64,000 nucleotides of DNA from IMG/VR virus record IMGVR_UViG_3300012988_000016, positions 244,896 to 308,895 of that record, one strand, 5' to 3'. The notes under the pieces are model-generated. The model worked only from the letters and a program-made list of their open reading frames with translations. It searched no databases and was not told where the DNA came from. A program made the position numbers and the translations under genes. Positions 950 through 64,000 of the stretch are shown here, piece by piece; the stretch's first letter is position 1, and each line of letters starts with the position of its first letter.

Positions 950-1380
950 CAGGGCAACCACCATGATTCCCGATCTTTGAACAACGGCTTGATCAAGTCG
1001 GCCTGGGCTTGACCATCTTTCCAACGTTGGATGAAGCGTTGGCGGTCTGCTTCGTCCTTGGCGTAACTGCCGCCACCCTCTTTCTGACCGTCCACCCGAC
1101 ACCAAGTCGCATCAGCTTGTTCGAAGGCGGCTTCCAAGCCGGCCCCTTTGCGGAGTGCTGATAGGAAGTCCAACGCACTGTAGACACATCCCCCAGAGCC
1201 AGGAATCAGCCTTGAGGCGACCGCTTTGGGGGTGTTGTCCCCATACGGTTTCTCGGTAGCTTGTTCGAAATTGTCGAACGCCTTGAGGATGCAGAAGGCG
1301 ATCGTCACTGGATGCCCTGGGTAGAGGGCGTGATCCGGAGTGATGCCGTATTCTTGAAATAGTTCCCGATCAATTGTCAT
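949..1380 (-). CDS. hypothetical protein (predicted leaderless)
   Basis: Class A motif places the start at ATG 1380 (MTIDREL). Confidence 0.7.
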   Translation of the reverse strand: MTIDRELFQEYGITPDHALYPGHPVTIAFCILKAFDNFEQATEKPYGDNTPKAVASRLIPGSGGCVYSALDFLSALRKGAGLEAAFEQADATWCRVDGQKEGGGSYAKDEADRQRFIQRWKDGQAQADLIKPLFKDRESWWLP

Positions 1381-1386
1381 ACCCAT

Positions 1387-1414
1387 CCTGACGGCCATCA
1401 GATGTGGAAGTTAA
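1387..1414 (-). promoter_or_regulatory. class A promoter-like motif
   Basis: TTAACTT-N12-GCCGTCAGG; ATG 34 nt from the first T. Confidence 0.65.
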
Positions 1415-1417
1415 GGG

Positions 1418-2362
1418 TCAAAAACGGGCTATACCAGCCTCATAGTAGATAGGCTGGAGCTCTGCCCCAAAGGCTCGACGGCCTAGCCGTTTGGCAGCCA
1501 GCGAGCCACTGAACAGGCCGCCAAAGGGTTCCCACACCACATCCCCTGGGTCAGATGAAGCTTCGATCAGGCGACTCATCAGGTCGAGGGGCTTCTGATT
1601 GGGATGCAGCATTTTGGTCCCCACCTTGACCCTCTCATGCCCATTGACTGGACCTCGGTTCCAACAATTGGTCACCCCATGAGGGCAGTTGAACTTAGCT
1701 CTCATCAGTTTCCACTCAGATGGGGTGACGGGATGCTGACCATCAAGTGAGAAATAGGGACGTCCCTCGGGTCTACCATGTTGATTGGCATGATTGACCA
1801 TCAGTTGCATCGCCTGCACTGGGGGAAAGTACCAGAGTCGTCCTTGATTGAGGTACTTTCGAGTAGCCGCATCCTTGACCCCACAAGCCTCGTTGGCTGA
1901 TTTGAGGGTCAGTCCAGTACGCCTCCATTCCCGCAGCAACCACTGTTTGAGCGTGGAACAGGCAACCTTTGGCTCAAACACGTACTGACAACATATCTCG
2001 GTCACGACAGGGAAGCGGCGTATTTTCTTCGTATCTACGTTGCCTGCAATGTGCTGAAGTCCCTTGTTCCACACATTGAGGTTTTGATACCGCCAGCCAT
2101 ATCGCTCCAACAATGGGTGAGCGGACGCCCACCCTATCTCGGTATTCCAGAACCAGAGGGTAGTTTGGGGCAAGGCTAGCTCCGACCAAAGCCTCACATG
2201 AGGCTCATACCAAGGCGGTATGCTGAGATGATCGGAGGTGTCTCCTTCGAAGCCCAATAGACCGTACGCCCCATCTGAGATGATGACGGTTGGCTTGGGC
2301 CAATCTCTGTAGAACTGCAGACTGTCCCCAAGATAAAGGGAGGCTTGCCCCTCAAGCATCAT
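1418..2362 (-). CDS. DNA N6-adenine/N4-cytosine methyltransferase, beta class
   Basis: N-terminal GDSL and VIISDGAYG (DPPY-like motif IV); C-terminal HPNQKP...DPGDVVWEPFGG (motif X/I). Confidence 0.85.
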   Translation of the reverse strand: MMLEGQASLYLGDSLQFYRDWPKPTVIISDGAYGLLGFEGDTSDHLSIPPWYEPHVRLWSELALPQTTLWFWNTEIGWASAHPLLERYGWRYQNLNVWNKGLQHIAGNVDTKKIRRFPVVTEICCQYVFEPKVACSTLKQWLLREWRRTGLTLKSANEACGVKDAATRKYLNQGRLWYFPPVQAMQLMVNHANQHGRPEGRPYFSLDGQHPVTPSEWKLMRAKFNCPHGVTNCWNRGPVNGHERVKVGTKMLHPNQKPLDLMSRLIEASSDPGDVVWEPFGGLFSGSLAAKRLGRRAFGAELQPIYYEAGIARF

Positions 2363-3258
2363 GGGGATGGTTGGTAGACCGTAAAATTGTTCACGAAGGA
2401 GCTCTTCTTAGGGTCCAACACATCATCCAACAACATGGTGAAATCCCCATTCTTGGTACGATTCCCATTGTTGATGAACCCACCTCTAATCCCAGAAGTG
2501 AACATCCATCGATGCTCGGCAGGGATCATTCGATCCAGCTTATCCCCTATACCGGCACCCAGTCTCAGTTGTTCGGCTCGCTTGGAACCAAAAATCAACG
2601 TATGGTCACGACGAACCAAATTATCCAATCGAGGCGGGCGTCCGTCATGAGCGTCGATCGCAGGAGCGAACAATGTGTTTTCAAAGCCGGCCCTAGGACG
2701 GTACCACCAGAATATCGGATCGGTGCTTTCACCCCGCATATCCTGCATATCAAAGCAACAAATGGCGATTGGCCATTCTGGATATAGACGCCCCAATTCG
2801 TCCAAGAAAGCCTCAGGGATATGGGGGCGTTTGTTGGACGGAACTTCTTTCAACGCTAGATTCAAACCAGCCGCTGAATTGGACAGCGCTACCGTATAGG
2901 CACCGGAGTCAATGATCTCGAAGGCTACTGCACCCAACACATCTTCGTCATCGTCTTCACTCAAAGAGAAGCTTCTGGAAAAGCTTTTCTGCTTGGGTTT
3001 AAGATGCTCGATCGCTTGATGGTATTCAGACAAGATGTCTTTGAAGCCGCTCGCATCCACCACATTAGCCGGACCCAATGAACCCAGGGCAGGGATGGGT
3101 AGGATCATGGCATTCGGGCCTCGCCTGTAGGCCGTCACACTATTTTGATAACCCAGGACGTGGACTGTCTCAACCCCATCTTCTGTGGGATGATCCACTT
3201 CAGCTGAATAGATGACGGTGTTGGAAAGCTCAGTACCAGATTCGATGACACAACACAT
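2359..3258 (-). CDS. conserved hypothetical protein (possibly DUF2330-like)
   Basis: 299 aa with HVLGYQN...GPNAMILPIP; class B motif 9 nt upstream. Confidence 0.7.
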   Translation of the reverse strand: MCCVIESGTELSNTVIYSAEVDHPTEDGVETVHVLGYQNSVTAYRRGPNAMILPIPALGSLGPANVVDASGFKDILSEYHQAIEHLKPKQKSFSRSFSLSEDDDEDVLGAVAFEIIDSGAYTVALSNSAAGLNLALKEVPSNKRPHIPEAFLDELGRLYPEWPIAICCFDMQDMRGESTDPIFWWYRPRAGFENTLFAPAIDAHDGRPPRLDNLVRRDHTLIFGSKRAEQLRLGAGIGDKLDRMIPAEHRWMFTSGIRGGFINNGNRTKNGDFTMLLDDVLDPKKSSFVNNFTVYQPSP

Positions 3259-3264
3259 GACAGG

Positions 3265-3753
3265 TCATACACCACCGAAAGGGACCTTGTGCGGGGGTTG
3301 CCAATAGTTTGGCCAGTTCTCGATCAGTCGGGTAAGACAGTAATCCATGTGCTCAATCACACTAAGAGGTACTTGATGCACATTCCTAGCATGGCTGACC
3401 TCTACCGGACATTCCAGCAACACCAACTCTGGAAAATGCCCAAAAGCCGACGCTATCTGAACGTAAGGCGCAAGATCGTACAACATCACATTGGTGTTAT
3501 CGACCACAACCGTCGATTCTCTAGACAATGGAGTGGTGGTCCGATAATAGTGCATGGGGGTGGACACCAGATTGACGAACTTGCGCAAACAAGCCCCATG
3601 AGCCAAACTCCGATCCTCTATTTCAAAGCTGTATCCACCTGGACCTTCATGCCAATGATCGGCACTGCAAATCGAAACGTCCCCCCAAGTGTTTCGCTTG
3701 ATCCAAGTAGATTTCCCAGCGCCTGGTAGCCCAATCAAAATCACCACTCTCAT
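3265..3753 (-). CDS. P-loop kinase (AAA_33/polynucleotide kinase-like)
   Basis: Walker A GLPGAGKS, SAD, VVVDNTN and RNVH lid motif. Confidence 0.85.
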   Translation of the reverse strand: MRVVILIGLPGAGKSTWIKRNTWGDVSICSADHWHEGPGGYSFEIEDRSLAHGACLRKFVNLVSTPMHYYRTTTPLSRESTVVVDNTNVMLYDLAPYVQIASAFGHFPELVLLECPVEVSHARNVHQVPLSVIEHMDYCLTRLIENWPNYWQPPHKVPFGGV

Positions 3754-3780: not shown

Positions 3781-4080
3781 TCAAGGCTTCGGAAGTGGGT
3801 CTGCTTTGACGAACCAGCTGACACCCCAGCAAGAGTAGTGATCTCCCGAACAGGTGCAGTAGTAGGCCAGCGGGTCACCCGAACTATCTAGCGGCACAGG
3901 AGTGTTGTGGGCACCGAACGCACAGGTGTCAGCCGTCTGAGGGTCACACTTGAAAGTGCCGTAGTTGAAATCAGCCGCATCATGCAGATAGCAGGAGTCT
4001 GGGACGGCTGGCTTCTGGTCAGGATCCTGACCTGAACATGAGGTTAGTACTAGGAACGCTAAAATGATGGTTTTACACAT
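3781..4080 (-). CDS. Cys-rich lipoprotein
   Basis: Signal peptide with lipobox LTSC; several Cys in the mature part; class A motif at 34 nt. Confidence 0.7.
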   Translation of the reverse strand: MCKTIILAFLVLTSCSGQDPDQKPAVPDSCYLHDAADFNYGTFKCDPQTADTCAFGAHNTPVPLDSSGDPLAYYCTCSGDHYSCWGVSWFVKADPLPKP

Positions 4081-4086
4081 ACCATC

Positions 4087-4114
4087 TAGAACGGAGCAAG
4101 GAAATGAAAGTTAA
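4087..4114 (-). promoter_or_regulatory. class A promoter-like motif inside an inverted repeat
   Basis: TTAACTT-N12-TCCGTTCTA-N6-ATG(4080); 14/15 inverted repeat 4088-4102/4117-4131. Confidence 0.75.
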
Positions 4115-6101: not shown

Positions 6102-6491
6102 TCAAAAGTTGTTCCCACCAAAGATCAGTTGATCGACTGATTGGGTCCAAACCGTTTCTTGTTGCAGACGCTCCAACTCAGCAGGGTCAGGCTGAAGCAC
6201 CTTCTCTTCACCAGACATCAAGGCCGAACCTGGCTCAGTCGCACACTCACGACACGATAGATAGGTGACCGCCGTCACTGGACGAACAACAGGGTACGAA
6301 TCCTCGGGGGTGGCGAAGTCATTGTCCTTCGGATCCTTCAAGGACCTAAGCCCTACCACGTAGGCCACTTGTTCCAGTCTGAATGAAAACAGGCTACCCT
6401 CAACGGTCAGGTCAGTTCCACAACGAGGACACACCTCTGGGAATTCGATTTCTCGAACGCGAACCACTAGATCCGCAAATTTGACCTTCAT
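6102..6491 (-). CDS. zinc-ribbon hypothetical protein
   Basis: CPRC...CREC; degenerate class A motif at 34 nt. Confidence 0.65.
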   Translation of the reverse strand: MKVKFADLVVRVREIEFPEVCPRCGTDLTVEGSLFSFRLEQVAYVVGLRSLKDPKDNDFATPEDSYPVVRPVTAVTYLSCRECATEPGSALMSGEEKVLQPDPAELERLQQETVWTQSVDQLIFGGNNF

Positions 6492-6528
6492 GGACGTCCA
6501 TACGGCTGTCTTGAAGGAGACCTAAGCT

Positions 6529-7585: not shown

Positions 7586-8053
7586 TCACTTGTACGGGTT
7601 GTGGATAGAGGCGATGGGGTCATCTTCCAAGACGACCTTTGCTGGCGGCAACTTGGCTGAGGCGACAGGGGCGGGGGCAGCCGAGGCGACAACAGCGGGT
7701 TTTAGGACTGGATTCTGGTACACCACCACGGGAGCGACGGGCTTGGGGGCCGATTGCACCGTCGGCACGACAGGTTGGGCAGAGGGTTGAGCTGAAGCGA
7801 CGGGTTGCGGTTCCCCTGCATCTGCCAATTCGCCCACAGACACCACTGGGATGCGATCCTGCTCTATGGAAGCTTGCCAACGCTTGAGAAACTCCAGCGT
7901 CTCTGCATCCAGAACCACAGGTGTGACGACAGCTTTGGTCTGTTCCACAGGGGCTGGTAGTTTGGGCACCGTTACCGAGAGGCGGCCACCCATGAAGAGC
8001 GCAACGGCTGAAACGAATATTGAGGCAATTGCGAAACGGTCTATGTTGTCCAT
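7586..8053 (-). CDS. membrane-anchored Pro/Ala-rich protein
   Basis: N-terminal hydrophobic helix, VASAxP low-complexity tail; class A motif at 34 nt. Confidence 0.65.
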   Translation of the reverse strand: MDNIDRFAIASIFVSAVALFMGGRLSVTVPKLPAPVEQTKAVVTPVVLDAETLEFLKRWQASIEQDRIPVVSVGELADAGEPQPVASAQPSAQPVVPTVQSAPKPVAPVVVYQNPVLKPAVVASAAPAPVASAKLPPAKVVLEDDPIASIHNPYK

Positions 8054-8059
8054 ATCCGG

Positions 8060-8087
8060 TAGAACGGATAGGACGTTTCGAAATTAA
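8060..8087 (-). promoter_or_regulatory. class A promoter-like motif
   Basis: TTAATTT-N12-TCCGTTCTA-N6-ATG(8053). Confidence 0.75.
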
Positions 8088-8731: not shown

Positions 8732-9000
8732 CAGAATTCCCCCTTCTCCAAGGAATCTGCACAGATATCACACTGGTAACCGCGCTGGACATCGATTGGG
8801 GTCAACATATCGGCACGTCCACAGGTCGGACACGGACAGTTGCGGGGATTGCGCTTGGTGGCAGCTCGAAGGGCAGAACGGCCGCCAGGATCGGCGAAAC
8901 CCACACCATCGATGGGAGCGAAATCTTCATCTTCGCCATCTAGGTCAAAATCTTCGCGATCGTCCTCAAAGCCGTCGTATCCGTCAAAGTCCTGATCCAT
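8731..9000 (-). CDS. acidic protein with zinc finger
   Basis: Asp-rich N-terminus, CPTC...CDIC; class A motif gives ATG 9000. Confidence 0.7.
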   Translation of the reverse strand: MDQDFDGYDGFEDDREDFDLDGEDEDFAPIDGVGFADPGGRSALRAATKRNPRNCPCPTCGRADMLTPIDVQRGYQCDICADSLEKGEF

Positions 9001-9006
9001 GACCCC

Positions 9007-9034
9007 TATAACGGATCCCACCGGGAGGAGTTAA
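9007..9034 (-). promoter_or_regulatory. class A promoter-like motif
   Basis: TTAACTC-N12-TCCGTTATA-N6-ATG(9000); its TAA is the stop of the upstream gene. Confidence 0.75.
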
Positions 9035-12033: not shown

Positions 12034-12061
12034 TTAAGAAGCTGTCCCGATGGCCGTTATA
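12034..12061 (+). promoter_or_regulatory. class A promoter-like motif, back-to-back with a class B motif
   Basis: TTAAGAA-N12-GCCGTTATA-N6-ATG(12068). Confidence 0.65.
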
Positions 12062-12067
12062 CCCAGC

Positions 12068-12346
12068 ATGAACAAGGGTGACCGAATCCGAGCTAGCTGG
12101 TTTGAGGCCAAGACTTCTGGGTTCTCCCTAGCGGGAGCACAGACCAAGTTTCCAGCAGTTCGTCACGAACTAACGGGAATCGTCCGACACATCCGTGGGG
12201 ACCACCCCATCAGCCCGACCAGCATCAGAGTCTACGTTGATCCTGATGGCGATTGGAAAGGCTCGACCATCAATCTCATTGGGTGTAAATGTGGACACCC
12301 TCATGTGGAGCTCAAGCCGGAATGGATCCTAGGAATCGTGGCCTGA
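12068..12346 (+). CDS. hypothetical protein
   Basis: Start reassigned by the class A motif. Confidence 0.65.
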   Translation: MNKGDRIRASWFEAKTSGFSLAGAQTKFPAVRHELTGIVRHIRGDHPISPTSIRVYVDPDGDWKGSTINLIGCKCGHPHVELKPEWILGIVA

Positions 12347-29448: not shown

Positions 29449-29783
29449 TTGGATTCCTCCACTTTGATCGCCCTAACGATCAAAGTCAGCACTTCCTCAT
29501 AGGTAGACTCATCATTGAACAGCCCCAAGACGTATGTCCATTTGCTATTGGCCGGAAACCCTCTCCGAAGACCGCTCTTCAGAGCCTCGACCCTCTTGGA
29601 ATCATCCCCGACCACCTTGTGACAGCCGCCTAATAGGCAAAAACACACAGCTTTTTCAGAGCTGAAGGAGCAAGGGTTCCCCTCAGCATCCTTTGCCAGT
29701 GAACGTTGAGCCCATTTGCTAGGGTCGGAGAAAAGAGCCAGTAGTGCTTTTAGGTCTTTCAGCAGAGGGGTCGTCAGGGGCAT
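29445..29783 (-). CDS. DUF6197-like protein
   Basis: DLKALLALF...WAQRSLAKD...CFCLLG; class A motif (29790-29818) gives ATG 29783. Confidence 0.65.
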   Translation of the reverse strand: MPLTTPLLKDLKALLALFSDPSKWAQRSLAKDAEGNPCSFSSEKAVCFCLLGGCHKVVGDDSKRVEALKSGLRRGFPANSKWTYVLGLFNDESTYEEVLTLIVRAIKVEESK

Positions 29784-29821
29784 GTTGGCTCTAACGACCT
29801 CTGCTAGACTGAACTTAAGGG

Positions 29822-36515: not shown

Positions 36516-36986
36516 CTATACACCGCTGATTCGGAAAGTCAGCCGCTTGGCCAGCTCAAAACCCTTCTGGGTCATCCTGGCTTCACTGACGTCTTGTCCG
36601 TTAGCCTCATTGGTATCTTGGCGATGTTCAATCAGTTCCAACTCGACCAATTTCTTGGCCTGACGAGACTCCCCAGGGAGGACCTCTACCCAACAGGTTC
36701 TGGAATCAGGATGACAGCCGTCGGCTTCTTCGAACAAGCTGATCAACAGCTTCTTCTGAGGCTTAGTGAGCTTGACTAGAGGCGAAGGGGTGGCGTCCAG
36801 TTGAGCCTCGTTTAGCTTCTCGGCGATGAATTGGGCTAGTTTGGGGCCCTCTACGTAGCAAAGGAAGCGTGCTGGACGAGACTTGCTGGTAGCGAACACT
36901 GCATCCCATAAGACGGTAGTCCTGGGCATCAACTGTTGGCCAGCTTCCGCCGTCTCATCCGAGAAAAGAAAATTGGGTTGAGTCAT
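36516..36986 (-). CDS. hypothetical protein, possible C-terminal winged helix
   Basis: LTKPQKKLL...KLVELELIE...RMTQKG; class A motif 36993-37020. Confidence 0.65.
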   Translation of the reverse strand: MTQPNFLFSDETAEAGQQLMPRTTVLWDAVFATSKSRPARFLCYVEGPKLAQFIAEKLNEAQLDATPSPLVKLTKPQKKLLISLFEEADGCHPDSRTCWVEVLPGESRQAKKLVELELIEHRQDTNEANGQDVSEARMTQKGFELAKRLTFRISGV

Positions 36987-37016
36987 ACTAGGTTGAACGG
37001 ATCTTAGGGCCAAACA

Positions 37017-37307
37017 TTAAGGATTGGCGTTCCAATAGGCCTCCCAAGCAGGGGCAGCCAATTCTTTCGAGGCATGACCACCACCCATCCCGAAGATGTT
37101 CCGACTCTTAGGGTCGGGCGGCATGTGGGTGCAGGCTTCGCACAATGGAACGCCGCAAACGAATCCGCCCGTATGCTGGCATTGACGAGTCGCCTTGGCC
37201 GAACAATTGACGCAAACCAAATCCTGATGCTCTTCACAGAACTCTTGTGCGGTCGGCTTCTGGCAGCGACCCACCCAGGCATTTTGGTAACAACAACTGT
37301 TCATCAC
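37017..37307 (-). CDS. Cys-rich zinc-finger protein
   Basis: Multiple CxxC/CxxH motifs. Confidence 0.65.
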   Translation of the reverse strand: MMNSCCYQNAWVGRCQKPTAQEFCEEHQDLVCVNCSAKATRQCQHTGGFVCGVPLCEACTHMPPDPKSRNIFGMGGGHASKELAAPAWEAYWNANP

Positions 37308-37555
37308 CGAAGTTTATCTGGCAGCGGGAACGAACGCAACATGGGGTTAGACAATCGGCCTCTGGACGGAAGCGGAGGGGGTGTGGAAGGTCGGTGGGGT
37401 GTTTTCAACCCTTCTTCAATCACCAGATCAAAGTCAGCATCATCAAGCTGAAGCGCTTGCTTGACCATCTGATCCAGCGTCAAGGTGGTGGTTCGGGTAG
37501 ACCCAACCACATGTTCGTAGTTGGGGGGTGGAGGGGTGGTGTCTTGATTAGCCAT
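37304..37555 (-). CDS. Pro-rich hypothetical protein
   Basis: Class A motif 37562-37590 gives ATG 37555. Confidence 0.55.
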   Translation of the reverse strand: MANQDTTPPPPNYEHVVGSTRTTTLTLDQMVKQALQLDDADFDLVIEEGLKTPHRPSTPPPLPSRGRLSNPMLRSFPLPDKLR

Positions 37556-37607
37556 ATTGGATTGAACGGTACAAGGCTGGCCAGAATTAACCCCTGCTGC
37601 AAAATTG

Positions 37608-44939: not shown

Positions 44940-45239
44940 CTAGCAAGGAATAGGCAGACCAGCTCGGCGGAAGTAATCACGGATCGTGCTCTTGAGGAGC
45001 CTCGATTTGGCCCGATAGCCGTATTGGTCGGCCGCCTTCAGTTGAGCCTCCAACTCGACATAGCATTGAGCCGCCACCTTGACGTCTGGGATATCCAACA
45101 CCACCAGCTCAACATCGTGATCCAACTGCCCCTCGGGGGTGAGACGGATGCAAGACAGATGCGGCATCCCATCACAGAAGGAGAGCGAAAGGCTAGCTTG
45201 GTTGATTTCCACGTGCTCGATGACGGTCATTTGGTTCAT
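44940..45239 (-). CDS. hypothetical protein
   Basis: Class A motif at 34 nt. Confidence 0.7.
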   Translation of the reverse strand: MNQMTVIEHVEINQASLSLSFCDGMPHLSCIRLTPEGQLDHDVELVVLDIPDVKVAAQCYVELEAQLKAADQYGYRAKSRLLKSTIRDYFRRAGLPIPC

Positions 45240-45245
45240 GTAGGC

Positions 45246-45273
45246 TAGAACGGATGCGGGGTTGAGAAGTTAA
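45246..45273 (-). promoter_or_regulatory. class A promoter-like motif
   Basis: TTAACTT-N12-TCCGTTCTA-N6-ATG(45239). Confidence 0.8.
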
Positions 45274-45781: not shown

Positions 45782-45945
45782 GATTGTGGGATTTGGTAAG
45801 AGGTTTCGCCGTCCAGGTATGGAAATTGTGCCTCACAGGCGGCTTCCTGCTGGCGAGCCTCGTAGGGGGTCAGTTCACCCCGTTCGAGCGCTTGATCGAT
45901 ACGGGCCAGCTCTTGATTGCGTAGTTCAGTATTGCGGTTTGCCAT
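45778..45945 (-). CDS. small protein (not in ORF track)
   Basis: MANRNTELRNQELARID..., 55 aa; class A motif at 33 nt; ATGA coupling. Confidence 0.65.
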   Translation of the reverse strand: MANRNTELRNQELARIDQALERGELTPYEARQQEAACEAQFPYLDGETSYQIPQS

Positions 45946-46028
45946 GCTGATATAACGGACAAGCTGGCCGATTGTTAAGCCTGACCAACCGTCAGTTCCA
46001 TCAATACCTCACCCTTCTTGGACCGTTT

Positions 46029-46366: not shown

Positions 46367-46618
46367 TCAGGTACGCTCAAGCTGGCAAGGCTTAGTAGGG
46401 TCTTGATGTGGAGATCCACATGGACACAGGCTATCGAGCGGCATCCCTTCACTATCGACGATCCGACGGGTGACAGCATTAAGCAACACCCAGAGCTGCC
46501 CATGAAGTGGGTCTTTGATGGCCCGATGCTGTTGCTGCTTAGACAAGGACAGCACGTTCGCTTGCTGGATGGCCAGCCGTCGTTGTGCATACCAGGTGCG
46601 AGACTCAGATTTGGTCAT
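46367..46618 (-). CDS. hypothetical protein
   Basis: Class A motif (46624-46652) at 34 nt. Confidence 0.65.
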   Translation of the reverse strand: MTKSESRTWYAQRRLAIQQANVLSLSKQQQHRAIKDPLHGQLWVLLNAVTRRIVDSEGMPLDSLCPCGSPHQDPTKPCQLERT

Positions 46619-46819
46619 GCAGGTAGAACGGATCCTCAGACCTATAAATTAAGCCTCAATCCTTAGAGGGGTCTCGTCTTCCGCCAATCGGCTGGGACGA
46701 GCGCAATATTCTTCCAACATCGCTGGATCGAACGATTTGCCGAACCAATCGAGCGGGCGGTTTGGGGCCCTTCAGCTTGATGGTCGGGCGAACCTTTACC
46801 CCATCACTCTTCTTCATCG

Positions 46820-48236: not shown

Positions 48237-48676
48237 GTCTCCTTTTGGGTCTCGGGAGCGAGCCGGTCAGCCAACTCGATCAAACTGTTGAGCTCCGCAG
48301 CGGTTCGGTGATGGATCGAGTTTTGGCCAAAGACCCTCAACAACCGCTCCACAGCCACACGTCCCTGTCCAATCAGCTGCTGATGCTGCTCACGATCAGC
48401 TTGTTGATACAGCTCTGCTTCAATCTGCTTCTGATCTAGGATCAGCCGCACCTCAGGTGTGTGGTAGTCTACTTTGCCGTACTCGATCATCGTCGCTTTG
48501 ACGAACCGACGCTCCTGCGTGGCAGGATCCCCGTCCACAACAACGAAGATATGCTGCTTGGTCACTCTGGTGACGGTAGCAAGCTTGTGGTCATAGCCAC
48601 GAAACGGTCCGAAACCGTGACGCTTGGCTTGCTGGATGAGTGCTTGTTGGCCTGCCTGAAAGTCTAGTTGGGTCAT
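48233..48676 (-). CDS. hypothetical protein
   Basis: Class A motif at 34 nt. Confidence 0.7.
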   Translation of the reverse strand: MTQLDFQAGQQALIQQAKRHGFGPFRGYDHKLATVTRVTKQHIFVVVDGDPATQERRFVKATMIEYGKVDYHTPEVRLILDQKQIEAELYQQADREQHQQLIGQGRVAVERLLRVFGQNSIHHRTAAELNSLIELADRLAPETQKET

Positions 48677-48682
48677 GCTGGC

Positions 48683-48710
48683 TAGAACGGATCGCCAGCT
48701 GGGAAGTTAA
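48683..48710 (-). promoter_or_regulatory. class A promoter-like motif
   Basis: TTAACTT-N12-TCCGTTCTA-N6-ATG(48676). Confidence 0.8.
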
Positions 48711-51932: not shown

Positions 51933-52003
51933 AGGGTGGTTCTACACCGAGGGATGGTGATGGGCAGGCTTAAGCGGTTGGCAGTTGGGCCGTATGGTCT
52001 GGC

Positions 52004-52303
52004 ATGCCGAACACCAAGCTGGATGAAGCCGAGCAAGCCATGATGGCCCAGATTTTCCAAACCCGTAAGGAAGTGGGTCAGGATGTCGATAAGGCGCTGG
52101 AGCGGTTACGTCCCCAAAACAAGCTGGACTATTTGGTTACCCAAAAGGTCTTGGCGGGCTATACGGCCTATCCGGATAAGGATGGGAACGATACGCTGTG
52201 CCTCCAGTTCCTCAATGGCGACAGTGTGGTGATCCAGGCTACTCCGATCCAAAACGGTTATTCGGCCGGTCTGTTGGTGGACGGTGAAGAGGTGGTGCCT
52301 TAA
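52004..52303 (+). CDS. hypothetical protein
   Basis: Class A variant TTAAGCG-N12-GCCGTATGG at 34 nt. Confidence 0.7.
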   Translation: MPNTKLDEAEQAMMAQIFQTRKEVGQDVDKALERLRPQNKLDYLVTQKVLAGYTAYPDKDGNDTLCLQFLNGDSVVIQATPIQNGYSAGLLVDGEEVVP

Positions 52304-52332
52304 TCTTTCGAGGCTGGGGCCGTTCTATCAGC

Positions 52333-52566
52333 ATGTTCCTCTTGTTGCTGAAGACTGAAAAGAACGCTGGCATCAACCTGAACTTCGTTGGCATGTATCC
52401 CTCCAAGGAGCGGGCCGAGCGACGGGTGGGGCCGGAGTACAAGGAGTTCCAGGAGGCTGGCTTCGGCCGATACCGCATGCTGGGTGGGATGGCCGACATT
52501 GATGCCAAAGCGGTTTGGGAGACCAGCAGCTGGCAAGGAGCCACCTACTTGTTAGCTTGGTACTGA
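52333..52566 (+). CDS. hypothetical protein
   Basis: Class A TTAATCT-N12-GCCGTTCTA at 33 nt. Confidence 0.7.
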   Translation: MFLLLLKTEKNAGINLNFVGMYPSKERAERRVGPEYKEFQEAGFGRYRMLGGMADIDAKAVWETSSWQGATYLLAWY

Positions 52567-52757: not shown

Positions 52758-52952
52758 TGATGATAGAACGGCCATGGTGGGGAGAAGTTAAGGCTCACCA
52801 CAGCTTCGGTAATTTTCGAATCCCCCGGTCGATCGCCAACGCTAGGCAGATCACCACATTGTTGACCAGCTCTTCCATCCTAGCATCGAGGCGGGCCAGG
52901 ATCCCTTTGGGCTTTTGAGGCATCGGTCCTCAGCTTAGCCCAAAGGGGCCTA

Positions 52953-53189: not shown

Positions 53190-53443
53190 GCGGTGATGTA
53201 AGCGTTGGCTGGCAGCCGGCGATCCAATAGTTGGCGGGCCAGGCTGTATTGAGTGCCCTCAGGGGTGAGGGTCCCAAGGCTGCCGTACTGATGGTCTTCA
53301 TTGCCATGTCGGGCTGTGAACTCGCCCGTGCGGCTACAACAGTAGAGGTCCTTGCCATCCAGGCGGCCGAGGAAGCGGCATTCATCGCAGTCGTGCTGGT
53401 ATAGGGGGCGGACCATTCGAGCAACCAACTTGGCGGTCTTCAT
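53186..53443 (-). CDS. conserved phage Cys/His protein
   Basis: HDCDECRFLG...DLYCC...ARHG; class A motif 53453-53480. Confidence 0.7.
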   Translation of the reverse strand: MKTAKLVARMVRPLYQHDCDECRFLGRLDGKDLYCCSRTGEFTARHGNEDHQYGSLGTLTPEGTQYSLARQLLDRRLPANAYITA

Positions 53444-53488
53444 GATGCATGATAGAACGGAAGTCGGTTTTGGAACTTAAGGGACAGG

Positions 53489-53871: not shown

Positions 53872-53874
53872 CCC

Positions 53875-54317: not shown

Positions 54318-54614
54318 TCAGACTCCGTAGACCTTGCAATTGAGGTCTTTCCAGTCTTGACCCACCTGACCGTCCAGCCATTCGTTGTACTGCCGGCGGG
54401 CCACTTGGGCGCACTCCTGGTACAGCTCTGTGGTCATGCCGACGGGGTTGCTCAACAGGTGGATACGGGTCTCACCATCAATGAAGTCGGCCGCGTAGCG
54501 GAGCAGTTGGCGGCCCAGCATCACCTCAACCACACAAGGAGCTCCAGAGCCGTCTGGATAGGGCTTGCCTGAGTTGGTGGAGCATTTGAGGCTGTTAGGG
54601 GTGGGCTGGTTCAT
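54318..54614 (-). CDS. hypothetical protein
   Basis: Class A motif (54621-54648) at 34 nt. Confidence 0.7.
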   Translation of the reverse strand: MNQPTPNSLKCSTNSGKPYPDGSGAPCVVEVMLGRQLLRYAADFIDGETRIHLLSNPVGMTTELYQECAQVARRQYNEWLDGQVGQDWKDLNCKVYGV

Positions 54615-54661
54615 GTCTGATGGAACGGAAGCCAGGTGGGGAAGTTAAGGCTTCCCCACCC

Positions 54662-55322: not shown

Positions 55323-55523
55323 TCAGATCTTGGTAGCCTGTTGGCGGCTCCAGTAGCAGACCCTACACCCACAGGGACGGCGAGCCATGAAGGCAGCTTT
55401 GAACTGTTCCTGTACGGCTGGAATGTCGACCACCAGCAGCTTGGCGACCCGCTTGGAGTGACGGGCTAGGATCTGGGCATTCATGCGGAGGGCTTCCGCC
55501 TCGTGAACCTGTAGGGTGATCAT
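55323..55523 (-). CDS. hypothetical protein
   Basis: Class A motif (55530-55557) at 34 nt. Confidence 0.7.
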   Translation of the reverse strand: MITLQVHEAEALRMNAQILARHSKRVAKLLVVDIPAVQEQFKAAFMARRPCGCRVCYWSRQQATKI

Positions 55524-55553
55524 GATTGATGGAACGGAACCTAGGACGGGAAG

Positions 55554-55793
55554 TTAAGCTCCAACCACGCAATAGAGCGTGCCTGGATTGAGGCGTTCGA
55601 GCTCTAGGCGACGAGCATTCGCCTCAGCGGTTTGCTCAGCCGTGAAGGCGTTTAGGCGGTATTCTGCTGAGGTGAATCGGGCTCGACTAACCGATCCATC
55701 CTTGTTGAGGCGTTTGACCAACAGGGTCTTGGTTGAGACCATATCGGTCCAATGTTTGGCCTGTAAGGCTCGGAAGGCGGCGGTGGGTTTCAT
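55554..55793 (-). CDS. hypothetical protein
   Basis: 79-aa ORF behind a structured leader. Confidence 0.65.
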   Translation of the reverse strand: MKPTAAFRALQAKHWTDMVSTKTLLVKRLNKDGSVSRARFTSAEYRLNAFTAEQTAEANARRLELERLNPGTLYCVVGA

Positions 55794-55875: not shown

Positions 55876-55985
55876 ACCTACTAGAACGGATGGGGGAGCG
55901 AGAAGTTAACCCTCTTGATACACCCCTATGTTGGGTTAACGATGGCCCTTGTTACTCAATCGGATAAGTAAACTGCGAGCAAAAA

Positions 55986-58097: not shown

Positions 58098-58313
58098 ATG
58101 CAAGAAGGAGACCTCGTTACGTTGAAGACAGCGGACAGCCCCATCATGGTAATCGAAAGTTTCCAGACGGGTGAACGTATTGCAAAGTGTGTATGGTGGA
58201 ATCCTTGGAGTAAGGAGATCCGTCATGAACAAATATACATTGGGGGTCTAAAGGAGTATGTACCTCCAAAACCAGACAATGGTAGGACCCTAAAAGTTGG
58301 AGTAAAGCGTTAA
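58098..58313 (+). CDS. YodC/DUF2158-like protein
   Basis: GDLVTLK...PIMVI...CVWW; AAGGAGG RBS. Confidence 0.75.
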   Translation: MQEGDLVTLKTADSPIMVIESFQTGERIAKCVWWNPWSKEIRHEQIYIGGLKEYVPPKPDNGRTLKVGVKR

Positions 58314-58337
58314 CTCCCGCCCACCCCGGCCGTACTA
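58310..58337 (+). promoter_or_regulatory. class A motif driving the tRNA-like pair
   Basis: TTAACTC-N12-GCCGTACTA; no ATG at +1. Confidence 0.7.
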
Positions 58338-58465: not shown

Positions 58466-58538
58466 TTGCGGCTAGTTCAACAGGAAGAGCGACCCTTGTT
58501 AAAAGGGAGAGAAGTGGGTTCGAGGCCCACGCCGTGAG
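58466..58538 (+). tRNA. atypical tRNA-like gene (anticodon loop GTTAA, Asn-like)
   Basis: Acceptor TTGCGGC/GCCGTGA, TA, D GTTC/GAGC, CCCTT-GTTAA-AAGGG, T GTGGG-TTCGAGG-CCCAC. Confidence 0.7.
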
Positions 58539-58541
58539 CAA

Positions 58542-58970: not shown

Positions 58971-59345
58971 ATGAAACGTAGCCCCGCCATCCTCCACATA
59001 GCTCAAGATCTACAGTGGACCCCTGAGGATGTCCTCACGCCCATCGAATCCGCCTACCAACGCCTCAAACTGGCGGGCCTCCACGTTCACCTATGTGACG
59101 ATCGACTGATCGGAGGCTCTCACTACGATGACTCGGATCATCGTATCCGTATGGTGCTGAACGGCTTCATGATCGCTCCCGAGGGAACGGGCTATCGGCT
59201 CAAGAGGGCATCCGACGGTCAGACGGACGGCATAGGGTGCCTGACGCTCGATCAAGCCATCAGGTTGGTGATCGATACGATCCAGCCTCAGCCGAATATT
59301 GAGGCCCCACCCAGACCCCCTCAAAAAGGCCCACAGCTCTATTAA
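58971..59345 (+). CDS. hypothetical protein
   Basis: Class B motif 11 nt upstream. Confidence 0.6.
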   Translation: MKRSPAILHIAQDLQWTPEDVLTPIESAYQRLKLAGLHVHLCDDRLIGGSHYDDSDHRIRMVLNGFMIAPEGTGYRLKRASDGQTDGIGCLTLDQAIRLVIDTIQPQPNIEAPPRPPQKGPQLY

Positions 59346-59369
59346 CTTTCCCCCACCTGATCCGTTATA
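59342..59369 (+). promoter_or_regulatory. class A motif driving a tRNA-like gene
   Basis: TTAACTT-N12-TCCGTTATA; no ATG at +1; CCTAGCTG/CAGCTAGG hairpin follows. Confidence 0.7.
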
Positions 59370-60810: not shown

Positions 60811-60818
60811 ACCCATCC

Positions 60819-61142: not shown

Positions 61143-61476
61143 ACTGGCGTAGCCTGATAGCTGCCAGTCGTCTTGACATCCAGGGTTCATTCACGAAACT
61201 GTATCGGCCGTCCATCAGTGTTATGGAGGCGATCATTTTAGATGTCCCATTGGGGTTCAGTTGCAGGATCTCAAACACGAACTGCCCATGCCAGCTACGG
61301 CTCGTTAGTAGACATCTCACGTTACGTAGTCCCGCCAGCTTGACCAAGCCGTCAATTTGCTGGATGGCTGTTGCCAACCATTCGTCTAGGAAACGTTCTT
61401 GGAATTGCTCGAACGTAAGCTCCCCAGAACGTATCTGATCATAGACCCTCCTAGCGTTCTTCGACTTGCGGGGCAT
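61129..61476 (-). CDS. hypothetical protein
   Basis: AAGGA RBS; 115 aa. Confidence 0.55.
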   Translation of the reverse strand: MPRKSKNARRVYDQIRSGELTFEQFQERFLDEWLATAIQQIDGLVKLAGLRNVRCLLTSRSWHGQFVFEILQLNPNGTSKMIASITLMDGRYSFVNEPWMSRRLAAIRLRQFIGS

Positions 61477-61960: not shown

Positions 61961-62010
61961 TTGGGCTTTACACCGGTTATCTTTTATCCGGAAGGGCCGT
62001 TGGTGTCTAT

Positions 62011-62307
62011 ATGTCGATGAATCCCACCATCCAAATTTTCGGCCGAACCCTCGACCTGATCCGCCTGGAGTCTAAGTACGATGACCAGATCCAGTTGGGG
62101 GTCTACCGGACCCCTGCCGGTCAGTACCCTAGGATTGAGGTTAATTGGTTCACCCATGTGGGTCAACCTGACTATTTGAATCTTTCGGTCCGACTAGCCA
62201 AGGATCTTGGAGTGGGATCGTATGGGGAATCGATCAAAGAGTTGGAGCAACGGCTCAAGAAAGAATTCAGTCTCTACCGAACCATCGAAGCCGAGTTGTT
62301 GGGCTGA
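62011..62307 (+). CDS. hypothetical protein, TIxxxGRxL family
   Basis: TIQIFGRTL; class A variant at 34 nt. Confidence 0.65.
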   Translation: MSMNPTIQIFGRTLDLIRLESKYDDQIQLGVYRTPAGQYPRIEVNWFTHVGQPDYLNLSVRLAKDLGVGSYGESIKELEQRLKKEFSLYRTIEAELLG

Positions 62308-62309: not shown

Positions 62310-62337
62310 TTAACTTCTCCACCTGGCATCCGTTCTA
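62310..62337 (+). promoter_or_regulatory. class A promoter-like motif
   Basis: TTAACTT-N12-TCCGTTCTA-N6-ATG(62344). Confidence 0.8.
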
Positions 62338-62343
62338 CCAGGT

Positions 62344-62484
62344 ATGAAACAAACAATCTCGCTACTGGGTGATGTGCTCGCTCTCTCGTGTTTGGTGGCT
62401 GCTGTCCCTTTCATGTTGGGCATGAAGGCTTACCGGAAACTGACTGGTAAGAAGCCCGCTCGCCCGATCAACATTTTCTTCTGA
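62344..62484 (+). CDS. 46-aa membrane peptide (not in ORF track)
   Basis: MKQTISLLGDVLALSCLVAAVPFMLGMKAYRK... Confidence 0.65.
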   Translation: MKQTISLLGDVLALSCLVAAVPFMLGMKAYRKLTGKKPARPINIFF

Positions 62485-62986: not shown

Positions 62987-63315
62987 CCAAAATGGACCAG
63001 TTCATCAAAATACCTCATCCAACCAATCGGGTCTGGCCTGGCACTCCGTATCATGTATTGATGACGGTTGAGCAGGCCTATGAGGATGGCCGTCAGACGG
63101 GCCTCAACTGGGCGGCAGCTGACCAATACGTCCCTGGCGGACCGTCGGTCGGACCAGGGCAACACATCGGATTCTCGGCGTTGGAGGACCAGGAGCGGCG
63201 GGTCCACCGTGAATGGATGCGGGGTTGGCATGCTGGCTTTCGGCAGCAATACCCCAAGGCGGCCTTACGGCCGCAATGGTACCGAAGATTCGATTTTGAT
63301 CTATCCGACGTCTGA
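62983..63315 (+). CDS. hypothetical protein
   Basis: AYEDG...G...W.RGW..G. Confidence 0.6.
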   Translation: MTKMDQFIKIPHPTNRVWPGTPYHVLMTVEQAYEDGRQTGLNWAAADQYVPGGPSVGPGQHIGFSALEDQERRVHREWMRGWHAGFRQQYPKAALRPQWYRRFDFDLSDV

Positions 63316-63332
63316 TCGGTGTATAGACCCTA

Positions 63333-63412
63333 GTCAGCCGTTTTGGATGGTCCAGAGCTGCTGATCCAAACCCCTCCTAGAGACCGTGCGGCTCATACTA
63401 GGAGGGGTTTGG
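63333..63412 (+). ncRNA. candidate two-hairpin small RNA
   Basis: Orphan GGTGTA at 63318; hairpin GTCAGC...GCTGAT then a perfect 15-bp inverted repeat 63366-63380/63398-63412. Confidence 0.4.
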
Positions 63413-63425
63413 TGTATGTTGGCTG

Positions 63426-63827
63426 ATGAGTCAACATCAGAAATTCAAGTTCTTCAGTTTTCACCAAACCTACGACGTAGACCAGCAGATCTCCAAGCAG
63501 GTGAACGAGTGGGTCCAGACCAACCAGGTGCAGGCTTGCTCGATTGGGGTTGAGTACGTGGAACGCCTCAATTGTTTGCTGGTCAGTCTGGGTTACCTGC
63601 CTGGCATCAGATTGACCACTCCAGGCGGGGGACAGGTCGGAAGCACCAGTTTTCCGGTGGAGCTTCATACGGTCAAATTGGGCCGACTATCGTTGGGCAA
63701 GTTGGATACCCTGGAGAGTCTACTCGAAGCTGAGGCTCAAAAGTTTGACGGGGTGATTTGCCACGAATTCTATGTCAACCAACTGAATGACGTGGTGGCG
63801 GTATTTTTGGTTCAGAGTAAGGCTTAA
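63426..63827 (+). CDS. conserved hypothetical protein
   Basis: Class B motif 9 nt upstream; SIGVEY...SLGY...ICHEFY. Confidence 0.7.
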   Translation: MSQHQKFKFFSFHQTYDVDQQISKQVNEWVQTNQVQACSIGVEYVERLNCLLVSLGYLPGIRLTTPGGGQVGSTSFPVELHTVKLGRLSLGKLDTLESLLEAEAQKFDGVICHEFYVNQLNDVVAVFLVQSKA

Positions 63828-63857
63828 CTTCTAGGCGGGCTCTTCCGTTCTAGCAGC

Positions 63858-64000
63858 ATGACCAAACGCAACCAACTATTCTCAGGCCCGTTCGACATGG
63901 AATGTACTTTCACTGATGCTGGCATGCAGCCACTTCGGCAGACCGTCACTTCGTTCGATCAGATCTTCACCCTACTGGTTCGATTGAACCAAACCTACAC
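63858..64000 (+). CDS. 5' end of hypothetical protein (partial)
   Basis: Class A motif 63824-63852, ATG at 34 nt; frame open to the window end. Confidence 0.6.
   Translation, partial: MTKRNQLFSGPFDMECTFTDAGMQPLRQTVTSFDQIFTLLVRLNQTY

What the first reader, a model, noticed from the sequence alone, without database searches (positions are those of the whole stretch)
1380..63858. Class A: ECF-sigma-like bipartite motif locked 34 nt before start codons, implying a leaderless regulon
Seen: TTAAYTT-N12-(T/G)CCGTTCTA-N6-ATG. The first T lies exactly 34 nt from the ATG at 1380, 4080, 6491, 8053, 9000, 12068, 36986, 45239, 46618, 48676, 52004, 54614, 55523, 62011, 62344 and 63858. It lies 33-37 nt away at 15835, 29783, 37555, 38715, 45945, 52333 and 53443. 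The spacer is unconserved, there is no Shine-Dalgarno, and the motif's TAA often doubles as the upstream stop codon. Known: AAC-N16/17-CGT is the signature of ECF sigma promoters (B. subtilis SigW/SigX/SigM type), and the spacing here is 16. Inference: a phage- or host-encoded ECF sigma starts transcription on the A of ATG, making dozens of single-gene leaderless mRNAs. The motif also corrects several ORF starts and reveals unannotated ORFs under 60 aa.
Basis: partly seen in the sequence, partly recalled or inferred. Interest (0 to 1): 0.8.

Follow-up and report, generated by a model that had tools for sequence, protein, structure and literature searches.

The report
Phage sigma-28-type promoters making leaderless mRNAs
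A giant soil phage carries dozens of copies of a two-box promoter placed so that transcription should begin on the A of the ATG; the box geometry and a sigma gene found 25 kb away point to a flagellar-type (sigma-28-like) factor copied from a myxobacterial host, not to an ECF sigma.

Summary
TTAAYTT-N12-KCCGTTCTA occurs 15 times in the window (at most 2 mismatches) against 0.06 expected. Of 20 strong sites, 16 have an ATG 5-6 nt after the second box. Two more sit before tRNA genes, so the motif is a transcription signal.

The window is the end of a 308,895-bp soil-metagenome phage contig. The motif recurs only in this phage, its strain variants and a few relatives, one of them 466 kb. Between two strains, 0 of 160 box positions differ, against 3.9% background.

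About 25.5 kb beyond the window, in the same gene array and the same sample, lies a 194-aa sigma factor. Its best matches are FliA/WhiG (sigma-28), but it has no region 3. A class-A promoter directly precedes it, here and in the 466-kb relative. Its closest homologues (about 65%) are Polyangiaceae sigma factors.

The motif has the sigma-28 geometry, octamer-N11-octamer (TAAAGTTT-N11-GCCGATAA). With the A of ATG as +1, KCCGTTCT occupies -15 to -8, as GCCGATAA does in a solved sigma-28 open complex.

So "alternative-sigma promoter giving leaderless first cistrons" is supported by inference only; no RNA data exist. "ECF" is probably the wrong family. "Single-gene mRNAs" is not supported.

The parts
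62310..62346 (+). class A promoter, ATG 62344 (46-aa ORF; next gene 62496 has AAGGAG)
63824..63860 (+). class A promoter (13-nt spacer), ATG 63858 (148-aa gene running off the window); TAA is the stop of the upstream gene
52300..52335 (+). class A promoter, ATG 52333 (77 aa); TAA is the upstream stop
58310..58337 (+). class A promoter with no ATG; tRNA-Leu(TAA) at 58466-58539 lies downstream
59342..59369 (+). class A promoter; ARAGORN-only tRNA at 59439-59509 lies downstream
48674..48710 (-). class A promoter, ATG 48676 (147 aa, weak ProQ_C-like match); next gene 48233 has AAGGAG
45237..45273 (-). class A promoter, ATG 45239 (99 aa)
45943..45978 (-). class A promoter, ATG 45945 (55 aa)
46616..46652 (-). 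class A promoter (13-nt spacer), ATG 46618 (83 aa)
52764..52791 (-). strong class A promoter with no ORF for about 190 nt; runs antisense towards gene 52333-52566
53441..53480 (-). class A promoter, ATG 53443 (85 aa; 37 nt from the first T)
54612..54648 (-). class A promoter, ATG 54614 (98 aa)
55521..55557 (-). class A promoter, ATG 55523 (66 aa); TAA is the upstream stop
55882..55909 (-). class A promoter with an 82-nt leader (hairpin plus U-run) before ATG 55793
36984..37020 (-). class A promoter, ATG 36986 (156 aa)
37553..37590 (-). class A promoter (13-nt spacer, ACCGTTCAA), ATG 37555 (83 aa)
8998..9034 (-). class A promoter, ATG 9000 (89 aa); TAA is the upstream stop
8051..8087 (-). class A promoter, ATG 8053 (155 aa)
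4078..4114 (-). class A promoter, ATG 4080 (99 aa)
1378..1414 (-). weak class A site (TTAACTT-N12-GCCGTCAGG), ATG 1380
12034..12070 (+). weak class A site (TTAAGAA-N12-GCCGTTATA), ATG 12068
29781..29818 (-). weak class A site (TTAAGTT-N13-GTCGTTAGA), ATG 29783
6489..6525 (-). very weak class A-like site (TTAGGTC...GCCGTATGG), ATG 6491
51970..52006 (+). weak class A-like site (TTAAGCG...GCCGTATGG), ATG 52004
61977..62013 (+). weak class A-like site (TTATCTT...GCCGTTGGT), ATG 62011
58466..58539 (+). tRNA-Leu(TAA), 129 nt after the class A site at 58310

Best explanation
Class A is the promoter of a phage regulon read by host core RNA polymerase carrying a phage-encoded sigma factor.

The sigma is 194 aa and is encoded about 25.5 kb beyond the window's end. 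It is derived from a Polyangiaceae FliA/WhiG-like (sigma-28-type) sigma. Relative to that host-type protein it has lost a 100-residue N-terminal extension. It has sigma2 and sigma4 but no folded region 3.

Proposed mechanism:
- Sigma4 reads cTTAACTT at -35 to -28.
- Sigma2 reads (T/G)CCGTTCT at -15 to -8.
- Melting starts at -11, and RNA starts 8 nt after that octamer, on the A of the ATG (plus or minus 1 nt).
- The first cistron is therefore a leaderless mRNA and is translated without a Shine-Dalgarno sequence.
- Downstream cistrons of the same array use Shine-Dalgarno sequences or coupling.

The promoters are packed into 34-nt intergenic gaps, so they act as successive internal promoters of long co-directional arrays. 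A minority drive tRNAs or transcripts with leaders. The sigma gene itself sits behind a class A promoter, giving positive feedback.

Shown: the motif, its ATG lock, its conservation, the sigma gene and its affinities, and the geometric fit. Inferred: which sigma binds, and the exact start site.
For: 1. The motif is real and locked to the ATG.

2. It is a DNA-level transcription signal. Two sites precede tRNA genes at unlocked distances. Two conserved boxes are separated by a fixed but variable-sequence spacer. All sites are co-oriented with the downstream genes.

3. Purifying selection acts on the boxes. Between two strains, 0 of 160 box positions differ, against 387 of 9810 elsewhere and 5 of 181 in spacer plus discriminator.

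4. Sigma-70-like promoters (5 found against 11.3 expected) and terminators (8 against 17.3) are below chance in 44-64 kb.

5. The sigma gene:
- Pfam r2 and r4; NCBIfam FliA 2.9e-43 and FliA_WhiG 3.8e-40.
- Best PDB sequence hits are FliA (9wsf, 6pmi, 1rp3) and WhiG.
- Foldseek top hits are SigD, WhiG and FliA; the first ECF sigma ranks 28.
- It lies on the same contig as the continuation of the window.
- It is present in the window's probable source run at depth 24.

6. A class A promoter lies directly upstream of the sigma gene in this phage. The same holds for its 61%-identical orthologue in the 466-kb relative.

7. Geometry. The sigma-28 consensus is TAAAGTTT-n11-GCCGATAA (PMC2859248). In the P. 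aeruginosa open complex the elements are (-15)GCCGATAA(-8) and (-36)TCTAAAG(-30) (PMC12784957). Class A is octamer-N11-octamer with the shared core GCCG. It falls in the same register when the A of ATG is taken as +1.

8. Sigma-28 residues that contact -12G, -13C and the -35 element (R80, D87, Y76, Q228) are conserved as R67, D74, Y63 and Q176. The specificity loop that holds the -11 base differs, matching T instead of A at -11.

9. Features expected of a start site and a leaderless mRNA: -1 is a pyrimidine and +1 is A; only ATG starts occur; there is no Shine-Dalgarno at locked genes but good ones at downstream genes.

10. Co-occurrence. Motif and sigma are both present in the two phages where both could be checked. 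Both are absent from Myxococcus phage Mx1.
Against: - No transcript 5' ends are available; no RNA run was listed.
- The sigma-promoter pairing is inferred, not tested.
- Class A matches the sigma-28 octamers at only 5 of 8 positions each, and has T rather than the flipped A at -11.
- The sigma scores below NCBI's curated FliA cut-offs (148 against 201 bits) and lacks region 3, which helps initiation in group-3 sigmas.
- The sigma gene is not in the window, nor on the window's own contig, which ends at 64000. It lies on another contig of the same sample.
- Only about 150 kb of a genome that may reach 0.47 Mb was examined, so other sigmas or polymerases may exist.
- A second ATG-locked motif (class B) has no assigned factor.
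- Upstream regions of the bacterial homologues gave no clean class A match.
Confidence: 0.6

Rival explanations
1. One reading: class A is an ECF (group 4) sigma promoter, read by a host or phage ECF sigma, and gives leaderless mRNAs.
For: - AAC-N16-CGT(T) is present in every site.
- The 466-kb relative encodes a genuine 180-aa ECF sigma (Sigma70_r2, r4_2, Sigma70_ECF). It lies inside an array of class A promoters, one of which starts right after its stop codon.
- The sigma found here has the two-domain ECF-like architecture.
Against: - No ECF sigma was found in the roughly 150 kb examined of this phage.
- No orthologue on a contig of this phage's size appears among the 120 best homologues of the relative's ECF sigma.
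- That ECF gene has no class A promoter upstream of itself.
- Its closest bacterial homologues show no AAC-N16-CGT upstream.
- The conserved blocks are octamers starting TTAA and KCCG, with sigma-28 spacing. These extend beyond the short ECF cores.
Confidence: 0.15
2. Class A is read mainly by the host's own FliA-like sigma, the Polyangiaceae homologue. The phage mimics a host regulon. The phage copy only boosts or prolongs this, or escapes host control.
For: - The host-type homologues are about 65% identical overall.
- They are nearly identical in region 2.4 and in the sigma4 recognition helix (GVSEPRISQLHSRA), so they should read the same DNA.
- This would explain how class A genes, including the sigma gene itself, are first switched on.
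Against: - The strict motif was not found repeatedly in any of 185,579 species genomes, although that pattern required the ATG.
- Upstream of the host-type sigma genes there are only TTAATTT boxes with the wrong spacing, plus a sigma-54-like promoter.
- The host is not identified.
Confidence: 0.15
3. Class A is an RNA-level signal in a 5' leader, such as a translation enhancer, a binding site for a phage protein, or a processing site. It is not a promoter.
For: The fixed distance to the ATG and the absence of a Shine-Dalgarno sequence could also suit a dedicated translation signal.
Against: - The motif also precedes tRNA genes and an ORF-free stretch.
- It has two boxes with a spacer of fixed length and free sequence, and no covarying helix.
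- It is not complementary to the anti-Shine-Dalgarno sequence.
- It often overlaps the upstream gene's stop codon.
- It fits a known sigma geometry and co-occurs with a matching sigma gene.
Confidence: 0.05

Closest known systems
Sigma-28 (FliA / SigD / WhiG) promoters, consensus TAAAGTTT-N11-GCCGATAA
   Same: - Two octamers separated by 11 nt.
- The -10 octamer begins (G)CCG and lies at -15 to -8.
- The -35 element contains TAA and lies at about -36 to -29.
- It is read by a group-3 sigma whose DNA-contact residues are conserved in the phage sigma (PMC2859248; PMC12784957).
   Different: - The sequence is TTAACTTc / KCCGTTCT, 5 of 8 matches in each octamer.
- T rather than A at -11.
- The elements are phage-borne and present in dozens of copies.
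- They are positioned to start on the ATG.
- The sigma lacks region 3.
- The target genes are phage ORFans, a UvrD helicase and tRNAs, not flagellar or sporulation genes.
ECF sigma promoters (AAC-N16/17-CGT; SigW, SigE and EcfG types)
   Same: - A bipartite promoter with an AAC...CGT core and 16-nt spacing.
- A sigma with only sigma2 and sigma4.
- Autoregulatory layout, with the promoter before the sigma gene.
   Different: - The sigma's sequence and fold neighbours are FliA/WhiG/SigD, not ECF sigmas.
- The conserved blocks are longer and start with TTAA and KCCG.
- No anti-sigma gene is seen next to it.
Phage-encoded sigma factors with their own promoter classes (T4 gp55, SPO1 gp28 and gp33/34, phiEco32 gp36; from general knowledge)
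   Same: A phage redirects host core RNAP to a phage-specific promoter class that is spread over its genome.
   Different: - Here the sigma is a recent capture from the host lineage (about 65% identity to Polyangiaceae sigmas), not a highly diverged phage-specific protein.
- The promoters are locked to start codons.
Leaderless transcription in phages (lambda cI from PRM; Thermus phages phiYS40 and P23-45; from general knowledge). Contrast: jumbo phages phiKZ and AR9, whose start-site maps show no leaderless mRNAs (PMC8244752, PMC5312081)
   Same: The -10 element is placed so that +1 is the A of AUG, and there is no Shine-Dalgarno sequence.
   Different: - In the Thermus phages the promoters are sigma-A-type extended -10 promoters in a host rich in leaderless mRNAs.
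- Here an alternative-sigma bipartite promoter does this in a genome whose other genes use AGGAG-type Shine-Dalgarno sequences.

Membership tests
Sigma-28-type promoter | -35 octamer and -10 octamer separated by 11 nt | tested here: met
   TTAACTTc-N11-KCCGTTCT in 17 of 20 strong window sites; 3 have one extra spacer nt. Consensus geometry from PMC2859248.
Sigma-28-type promoter | Sequence TAAAGTTT / GCCGATAA, including the flipped A at -11 | tested here: not met
   5 of 8 matches in each octamer. CCG at -14 to -12 is shared, but -11 is an invariant T (36 of 36 sites) instead of A (PMC12784957).
Sigma-28-type promoter | -10 octamer at -15 to -8 from a mapped start site; transcription depends on the sigma | not testable with these tools
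   The register fits only if +1 is the A of ATG. No RNA run was listed.
FliA/WhiG sigma family (the 194-aa protein, L145:10731-11312) | Score above the curated family cut-off | tested here: not met
   NF005413 FliA scores 148.4 bits against a cut-off of 201. TIGR02479 scores 138 against 189.6. These are the best-scoring families, but matched in two stretches only.
FliA/WhiG sigma family (the 194-aa protein) | Domains sigma2, sigma3 and sigma4 | tested here: not met
   Sigma2 (residues 6-89) and sigma4 (129-187) align to FliA. The linker is 39 aa, against 78 aa in FliA. In the AF2 model residues 84-121 are disordered and there is no sigma3 fold.
FliA/WhiG sigma family (the 194-aa protein) | Conserved promoter-contact residues (Y76, R80, D87, Q228 of P. 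aeruginosa sigma-28) | tested here: met
   Y63, R67, D74 and Q176 are conserved. R101 is replaced by K88 and S224 by P172. The specificity loop differs.
ECF (group 4) sigma system | Promoter core AAC-N16/17-CGT | tested here: met
   Present in all strong sites with 16-nt spacing, but it is contained within the longer sigma-28-like boxes.
ECF (group 4) sigma system | A cognate ECF sigma gene in the genome, usually with an anti-sigma gene | tested here: inconclusive
   None was found in the window or in about 90 kb of further loci of this phage. One was found in the 466-kb relative. Most of the genome was not examined.
Leaderless mRNA | AUG start codon and no Shine-Dalgarno sequence | tested here: met
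   All locked starts are ATG, and none has an SD of 5 nt or more.
Leaderless mRNA | 5' end within 0-5 nt of the start codon | not testable with these tools
   No RNA data were available.

The most novel reading that the evidence does not exclude
A giant (0.3-0.47 Mb) phage of a Polyangiaceae-like myxobacterium captured a host FliA-like sigma, stripped off its N-terminal extension, and spread its promoter over the genome so that a whole temporal class of genes is made as leaderless mRNAs. A second ATG-locked motif (class B, YGGTGTA) would mean that most phage transcripts in this region start on their AUG. That implies the phage relies on, or induces, preferential translation of leaderless mRNAs during infection.
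Probability: 0.3. Interest if true: 0.8.

Novelty: new variant of a known kind. Interest (0 to 1): 0.62.

Why it matters
Phage-encoded sigma factors and leaderless phage mRNAs are each known. A host-derived sigma-28-type factor, without region 3, paired with dozens of promoters locked to start codons in a huge phage does not appear in the literature searched here.

If confirmed, it would give three things:
- A natural, compact 34-nt "promoter plus start codon" module with a matching small sigma, useful as an orthogonal expression part.
- A case of a group-3 sigma working with ECF-like architecture and a T at -11.
- A handle on the host (Polyangiaceae-like Myxococcota) and on the gene timing of an uncultivated giant phage.

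It also shows that gene callers mis-start or miss genes in such genomes.

Tried and rejected
- Known-phage searches. Megablast of 12 kb and tblastn of the 2446-aa and 652-aa proteins against 50,697 phage records found nothing. Only the AAA ATPase found Myxococcus phage Mx1, at 35% identity.
- Mx1 as a model. It lacks class A. Its 335-aa sigma has no homologue in any fetched locus of this phage. The locus search with that sigma family was filled to its limit by Mx1-like phages.
- RNA evidence. No RNA run was listed, so read laying was used only to show that the sigma locus is present in the DNA runs.
- Sigma inside the window. None was found by Pfam or PHROGs on 97 ORFs, by relaxed Pfam on ten ORFs of 147-228 aa, or by Atlas look-ups of the 155- and 156-aa class-A-driven proteins.
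- Autoregulatory promoters of bacterial homologues. The ECF homologues show no AAC-N16-CGT, except one GGAACC-N16-CCGTT inside a called gene. The FliA-like homologues show only TTAATTT boxes with a spacer 2 nt too short. Neither is usable as support.
- The sigma in IMG/VR. An exact 27-mer and a close-relative search did not find it. The likely reason is that the window's contig ends at 64000.
- Possible small RNAs behind the ATG-less promoters. Folding z-scores were -1.6 and -1.0, not significant.
- Class B as a Shine-Dalgarno variant. Rejected: GGTG ends 11-12 nt before the ATG, which is too far.

Full report
**What the window is.** The window has 52-56% G+C. It is packed with small ORFs of unknown function, mostly on the minus strand up to about 55.9 kb and on the plus strand from 56 kb on. 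It is identical to part of IMGVR_UViG_3300012988_000016, also filed as Ga0164306_10000002: 308,895 bp from a soil metagenome. Loci fetched from that contig stop exactly at 64000, so the window is probably the contig's end. No deposited phage is similar at DNA level. The only link is distant protein similarity to Myxococcus phage Mx1: AAA ATPases at 35%, an 80-aa protein at 53%, and a dUTPase at 47% in a relative.

**The observation.** TTAAYTT-N12-KCCGTTCTA with at most 2 mismatches occurs 15 times, against 0.06 expected. Eight of the sites keep only a degenerate form.

- A two-box weight-matrix scan that ignores the ATG gives 20 strong sites, all pointing the same way as the gene that follows. 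Sixteen have an ATG 5-6 nt after TCTA, and none has GTG or TTG there.
- With flanking loci of the same phage, 36 sites give the consensus gcC-TTAACTT-ccc-N9-a-TCCGTTCTA-tC-N3-C-ATG-a. TTAA, CCGT and the final A are invariant.
- In those 36 sites the ATG is at the same place in 21 and one nt earlier in 5. The base before it is a pyrimidine in 29.
- In 9 of 20 strong sites the TAA of the first box is the stop codon of the upstream gene. In most others that stop lies 4-25 nt upstream, so the motif is the whole intergenic region.

**It is a transcription signal.**

- Sites at 58310 and 59342 have no locked ATG. They lie 129 and 70 nt before a tRNA-Leu and a second tRNA called by ARAGORN only.
- The site at 55909(-) has an 82-nt leader. 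The site at 52791(-) has no ORF for about 190 nt.
- Beyond the window, a few sites have leaders of 140-180 nt before larger genes.
- In 44-64 kb, sigma-70-type promoters (5 found against 11.3 expected) and intrinsic terminators (8 against 17.3) are below chance.
- Genes locked to the motif have no Shine-Dalgarno sequence. Genes just downstream in the same arrays have canonical ones: AAGGAG at 48233, 62496, 58098 and 39431. The host therefore uses ordinary Shine-Dalgarno initiation, and only the first cistron after each motif lacks it.

**Conservation.**

- A strain variant, 94-99% identical (Ga0164309_10000001, 285,219 bp, and others), covers 52-64 kb and continues beyond the window.
- Across ten shared sites, 0 of 160 box positions differ. 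The comparison figures are 5 of 181 in spacer plus discriminator and 387 of 9810 elsewhere. The probability of zero changes in the boxes by chance is about 0.002.
- The strict motif with its ATG is found in IMG/VR only in this phage and three related contigs.
- In 185,579 species genomes it gives only single scattered hits, as chance predicts.
- In JGI metagenomes it appears in this phage, its variants, some small contigs and a 465,854-bp relative (Ga0207933_1000001) with at least 17 copies.
- Mx1 has no class A motif.

**The sigma factor.** No sigma is encoded in the window. Scanning ORFs of the newly fetched loci found two sigma genes.

- A genuine ECF sigma of 180 aa, but only in the 466-kb relative. 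It lies among class A promoters but is not preceded by one.
- A 194-aa sigma in the strain variant of this phage, with a 205-aa orthologue (61% identity) in the relative.

The 194-aa gene lies on contig Ga0164308_10000019. That contig also carries the continuation of the window, which places the gene about 25.5 kb past position 64000 in the same plus-strand array. The run that is the probable source of the window holds the whole locus on an 81.6-kb contig at depth 24. It differs by one substitution and a 3-nt deletion. The identical protein also sits on a 475,623-bp contig, so the genome may be about 0.47 Mb.

**What kind of sigma.**

- Pfam finds regions 2 and 4 only.
- The best NCBIfam families are FliA (2.9e-43) and FliA/WhiG (3.8e-40), both below their curated cut-offs and matched in two stretches.
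- The best solved structures by sequence are FliA (9wsf, 9wsm, 6pmi, 1rp3) and WhiG.
- An AlphaFold model has confident sigma2 (residues 6-78) and sigma4 (123-193) joined by a disordered stretch (84-121), with no sigma3 domain.
- Its Foldseek neighbours are SigD, WhiG and FliA. The first ECF sigma ranks 28.
- The closest homologues (60-66%) are 280-300-aa proteins of Polyangiaceae MAGs, named FliA by JGI. They have the same short linker plus a 100-residue N-terminal extension that the phage copy lacks. The sigma4 recognition helix is identical. In two bacterial contigs this gene lies next to pilM and pilN.

**Fit between promoter and sigma.** The sigma-28 consensus is TAAAGTTT-n11-GCCGATAA (PMC2859248). 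Class A is TTAACTTc-N11-KCCGTTCT. The geometry is the same, the GCCG core is shared, and each octamer matches at 5 of 8 positions.

In the P. aeruginosa sigma-28 open complex the elements are (-15)GCCGATAA(-8) and (-36)TCTAAAG(-30) (PMC12784957). If the A of the ATG is taken as +1, class A puts KCCGTTCT at -15 to -8 and cTTAAC at -35 to -30.

The same paper assigns R80 to -12G, D87 to -13C, Y76 to stacking on the flipped -11 base, and Q228 to the -35 element. The phage sigma keeps these as R67, D74, Y63 and Q176. The specificity loop around the -11 base is different (QDQTPAEG against YDAGKGAS). That agrees with CCG being kept and A-11 being replaced by T. This residue mapping is my inference from the printed alignment.

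**Feedback layout.**

- In this phage a class A promoter (TTAAGTT-N12-TCCGTTCTA) is followed by its locked ATG, an 8-codon ORF, 28 nt, and then the sigma ATG.
- In the relative, a class A promoter drives a 43-aa ORF whose stop overlaps the sigma start (ATGA).

Where both could be checked, motif and sigma are present together in two phages and absent together from Mx1.

**Most likely mechanism.** Core RNAP carrying this sigma-28-like factor recognises class A and starts on the A of the ATG, plus or minus 1 nt. This makes the first cistron leaderless. The promoters fill the gaps between co-directional genes and no terminators separate them, so they should give nested polycistronic transcripts rather than single-gene mRNAs. 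How class A is first switched on is open. The nearly identical DNA-reading parts of the host-type sigma suggest the host factor could prime it.

**Limits.**

- No transcript ends are available.
- The sigma-promoter pairing is untested.
- Only about 150 kb of the genome was seen.
- The ECF reading is weakened but not excluded.

**Comparison with known systems.** Phage sigmas with their own promoter classes, and leaderless phage mRNAs, are both known. The two jumbo phages with start-site maps, phiKZ and AR9, have no leaderless mRNAs (PMC8244752, PMC5312081). Full-text searches for phage-encoded FliA-like sigmas, and for leaderless regulons driven by phage sigmas, found nothing. I therefore rate this a new variant of a known kind.

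Noticed in passing
window, e.g. 3272(-), 4942(-), 14848(-)/14863(+), 33577(-), 43540(-), 60567(-)/60576(+), 63412(+): A second ATG-locked motif ('class B'): YGGTGTA with its last A 9-10 nt before an ATG. This holds for 36 of the 93 GTGTA in the window, with no -35 box. At divergent gene pairs it forms TACACC-N-GGTGTA palindromes. It is interleaved with class A in the same arrays and is probably another promoter class giving leaderless mRNAs. No factor is assigned.
   Followed up: partly
window 21346-28686 (+), with 20174-21349 (+): A 2446-aa ORF with collagen triple-helix repeats (Pfam 2e-13) and no phage homologue by tblastn. It interrupts the minus-strand array and is probably a fibre or other structural protein.
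   Followed up: partly
window 55796-55875 (-): The leader behind the class A site at 55909 folds into a hairpin with a stem of about 12 bp, followed by CCCUUUUCC, just before gene 55793. It looks like an attenuator or small RNA, but the folding z-score is only -1.6.
   Followed up: partly
window 52570-52757 (-): One of the strongest class A sites (52791) is followed by about 190 nt without an ORF. This stretch is convergent with gene 52333-52566 and could be an antisense or non-coding RNA. Folding z-score is -1.0.
   Followed up: partly
window 53680-53905 and 59936-61502; contig end at 64000: Strain variants replace these segments. The assembly of the source sample breaks at 64000: a 3.7-kb contig overlaps the last 123 nt. 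The class-A-rich accessory region is therefore hypervariable between co-occurring strains.
   Followed up: partly
window 13784-14833 (-) and 30426-31442 (-); 16600-16803 (-): Two paralogous AAA ATPases (35-37% identical to the Mx1 AAA ATPase) and an 80-aa protein 53% identical to an Mx1 protein. These are the only links to a cultured phage, and they hint at a myxobacterial host.
   Followed up: partly
L126:640-770 (466-kb relative); L157 and L158, about 1890-1990: Sigma-54-like -24/-12 elements occur upstream of two kinds of sigma gene: TGGCAC-N5-TTAC before the relative's ECF sigma gene, and TGGCAC-N5-CTGCA before the Polyangiaceae homologues of the phage sigma. The latter also have two TTAATTTCG repeats and lie next to pilM/pilN.
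   Followed up: no
Myxococcus phage Mx1 (L024-L027): Mx1 has its own start-linked motif: TAGATCA at -24 to -18 before 18 ATGs, followed by AGGAG. It is unrelated to class A.
   Followed up: no
window 56055-57059 (+): A 334-aa protein with a GIY-YIG domain and a weak integrase-like match sits at the point where the two gene arrays diverge.
   Followed up: no
L008:6003-6041: Elsewhere in the same phage a degenerate class A site (TAAAGTT-N12-GCCGTTATA, closer to the sigma-28 -35 box) precedes a 1063-aa UvrD-type helicase gene. The regulon is therefore not limited to small ORFans.
   Followed up: partly
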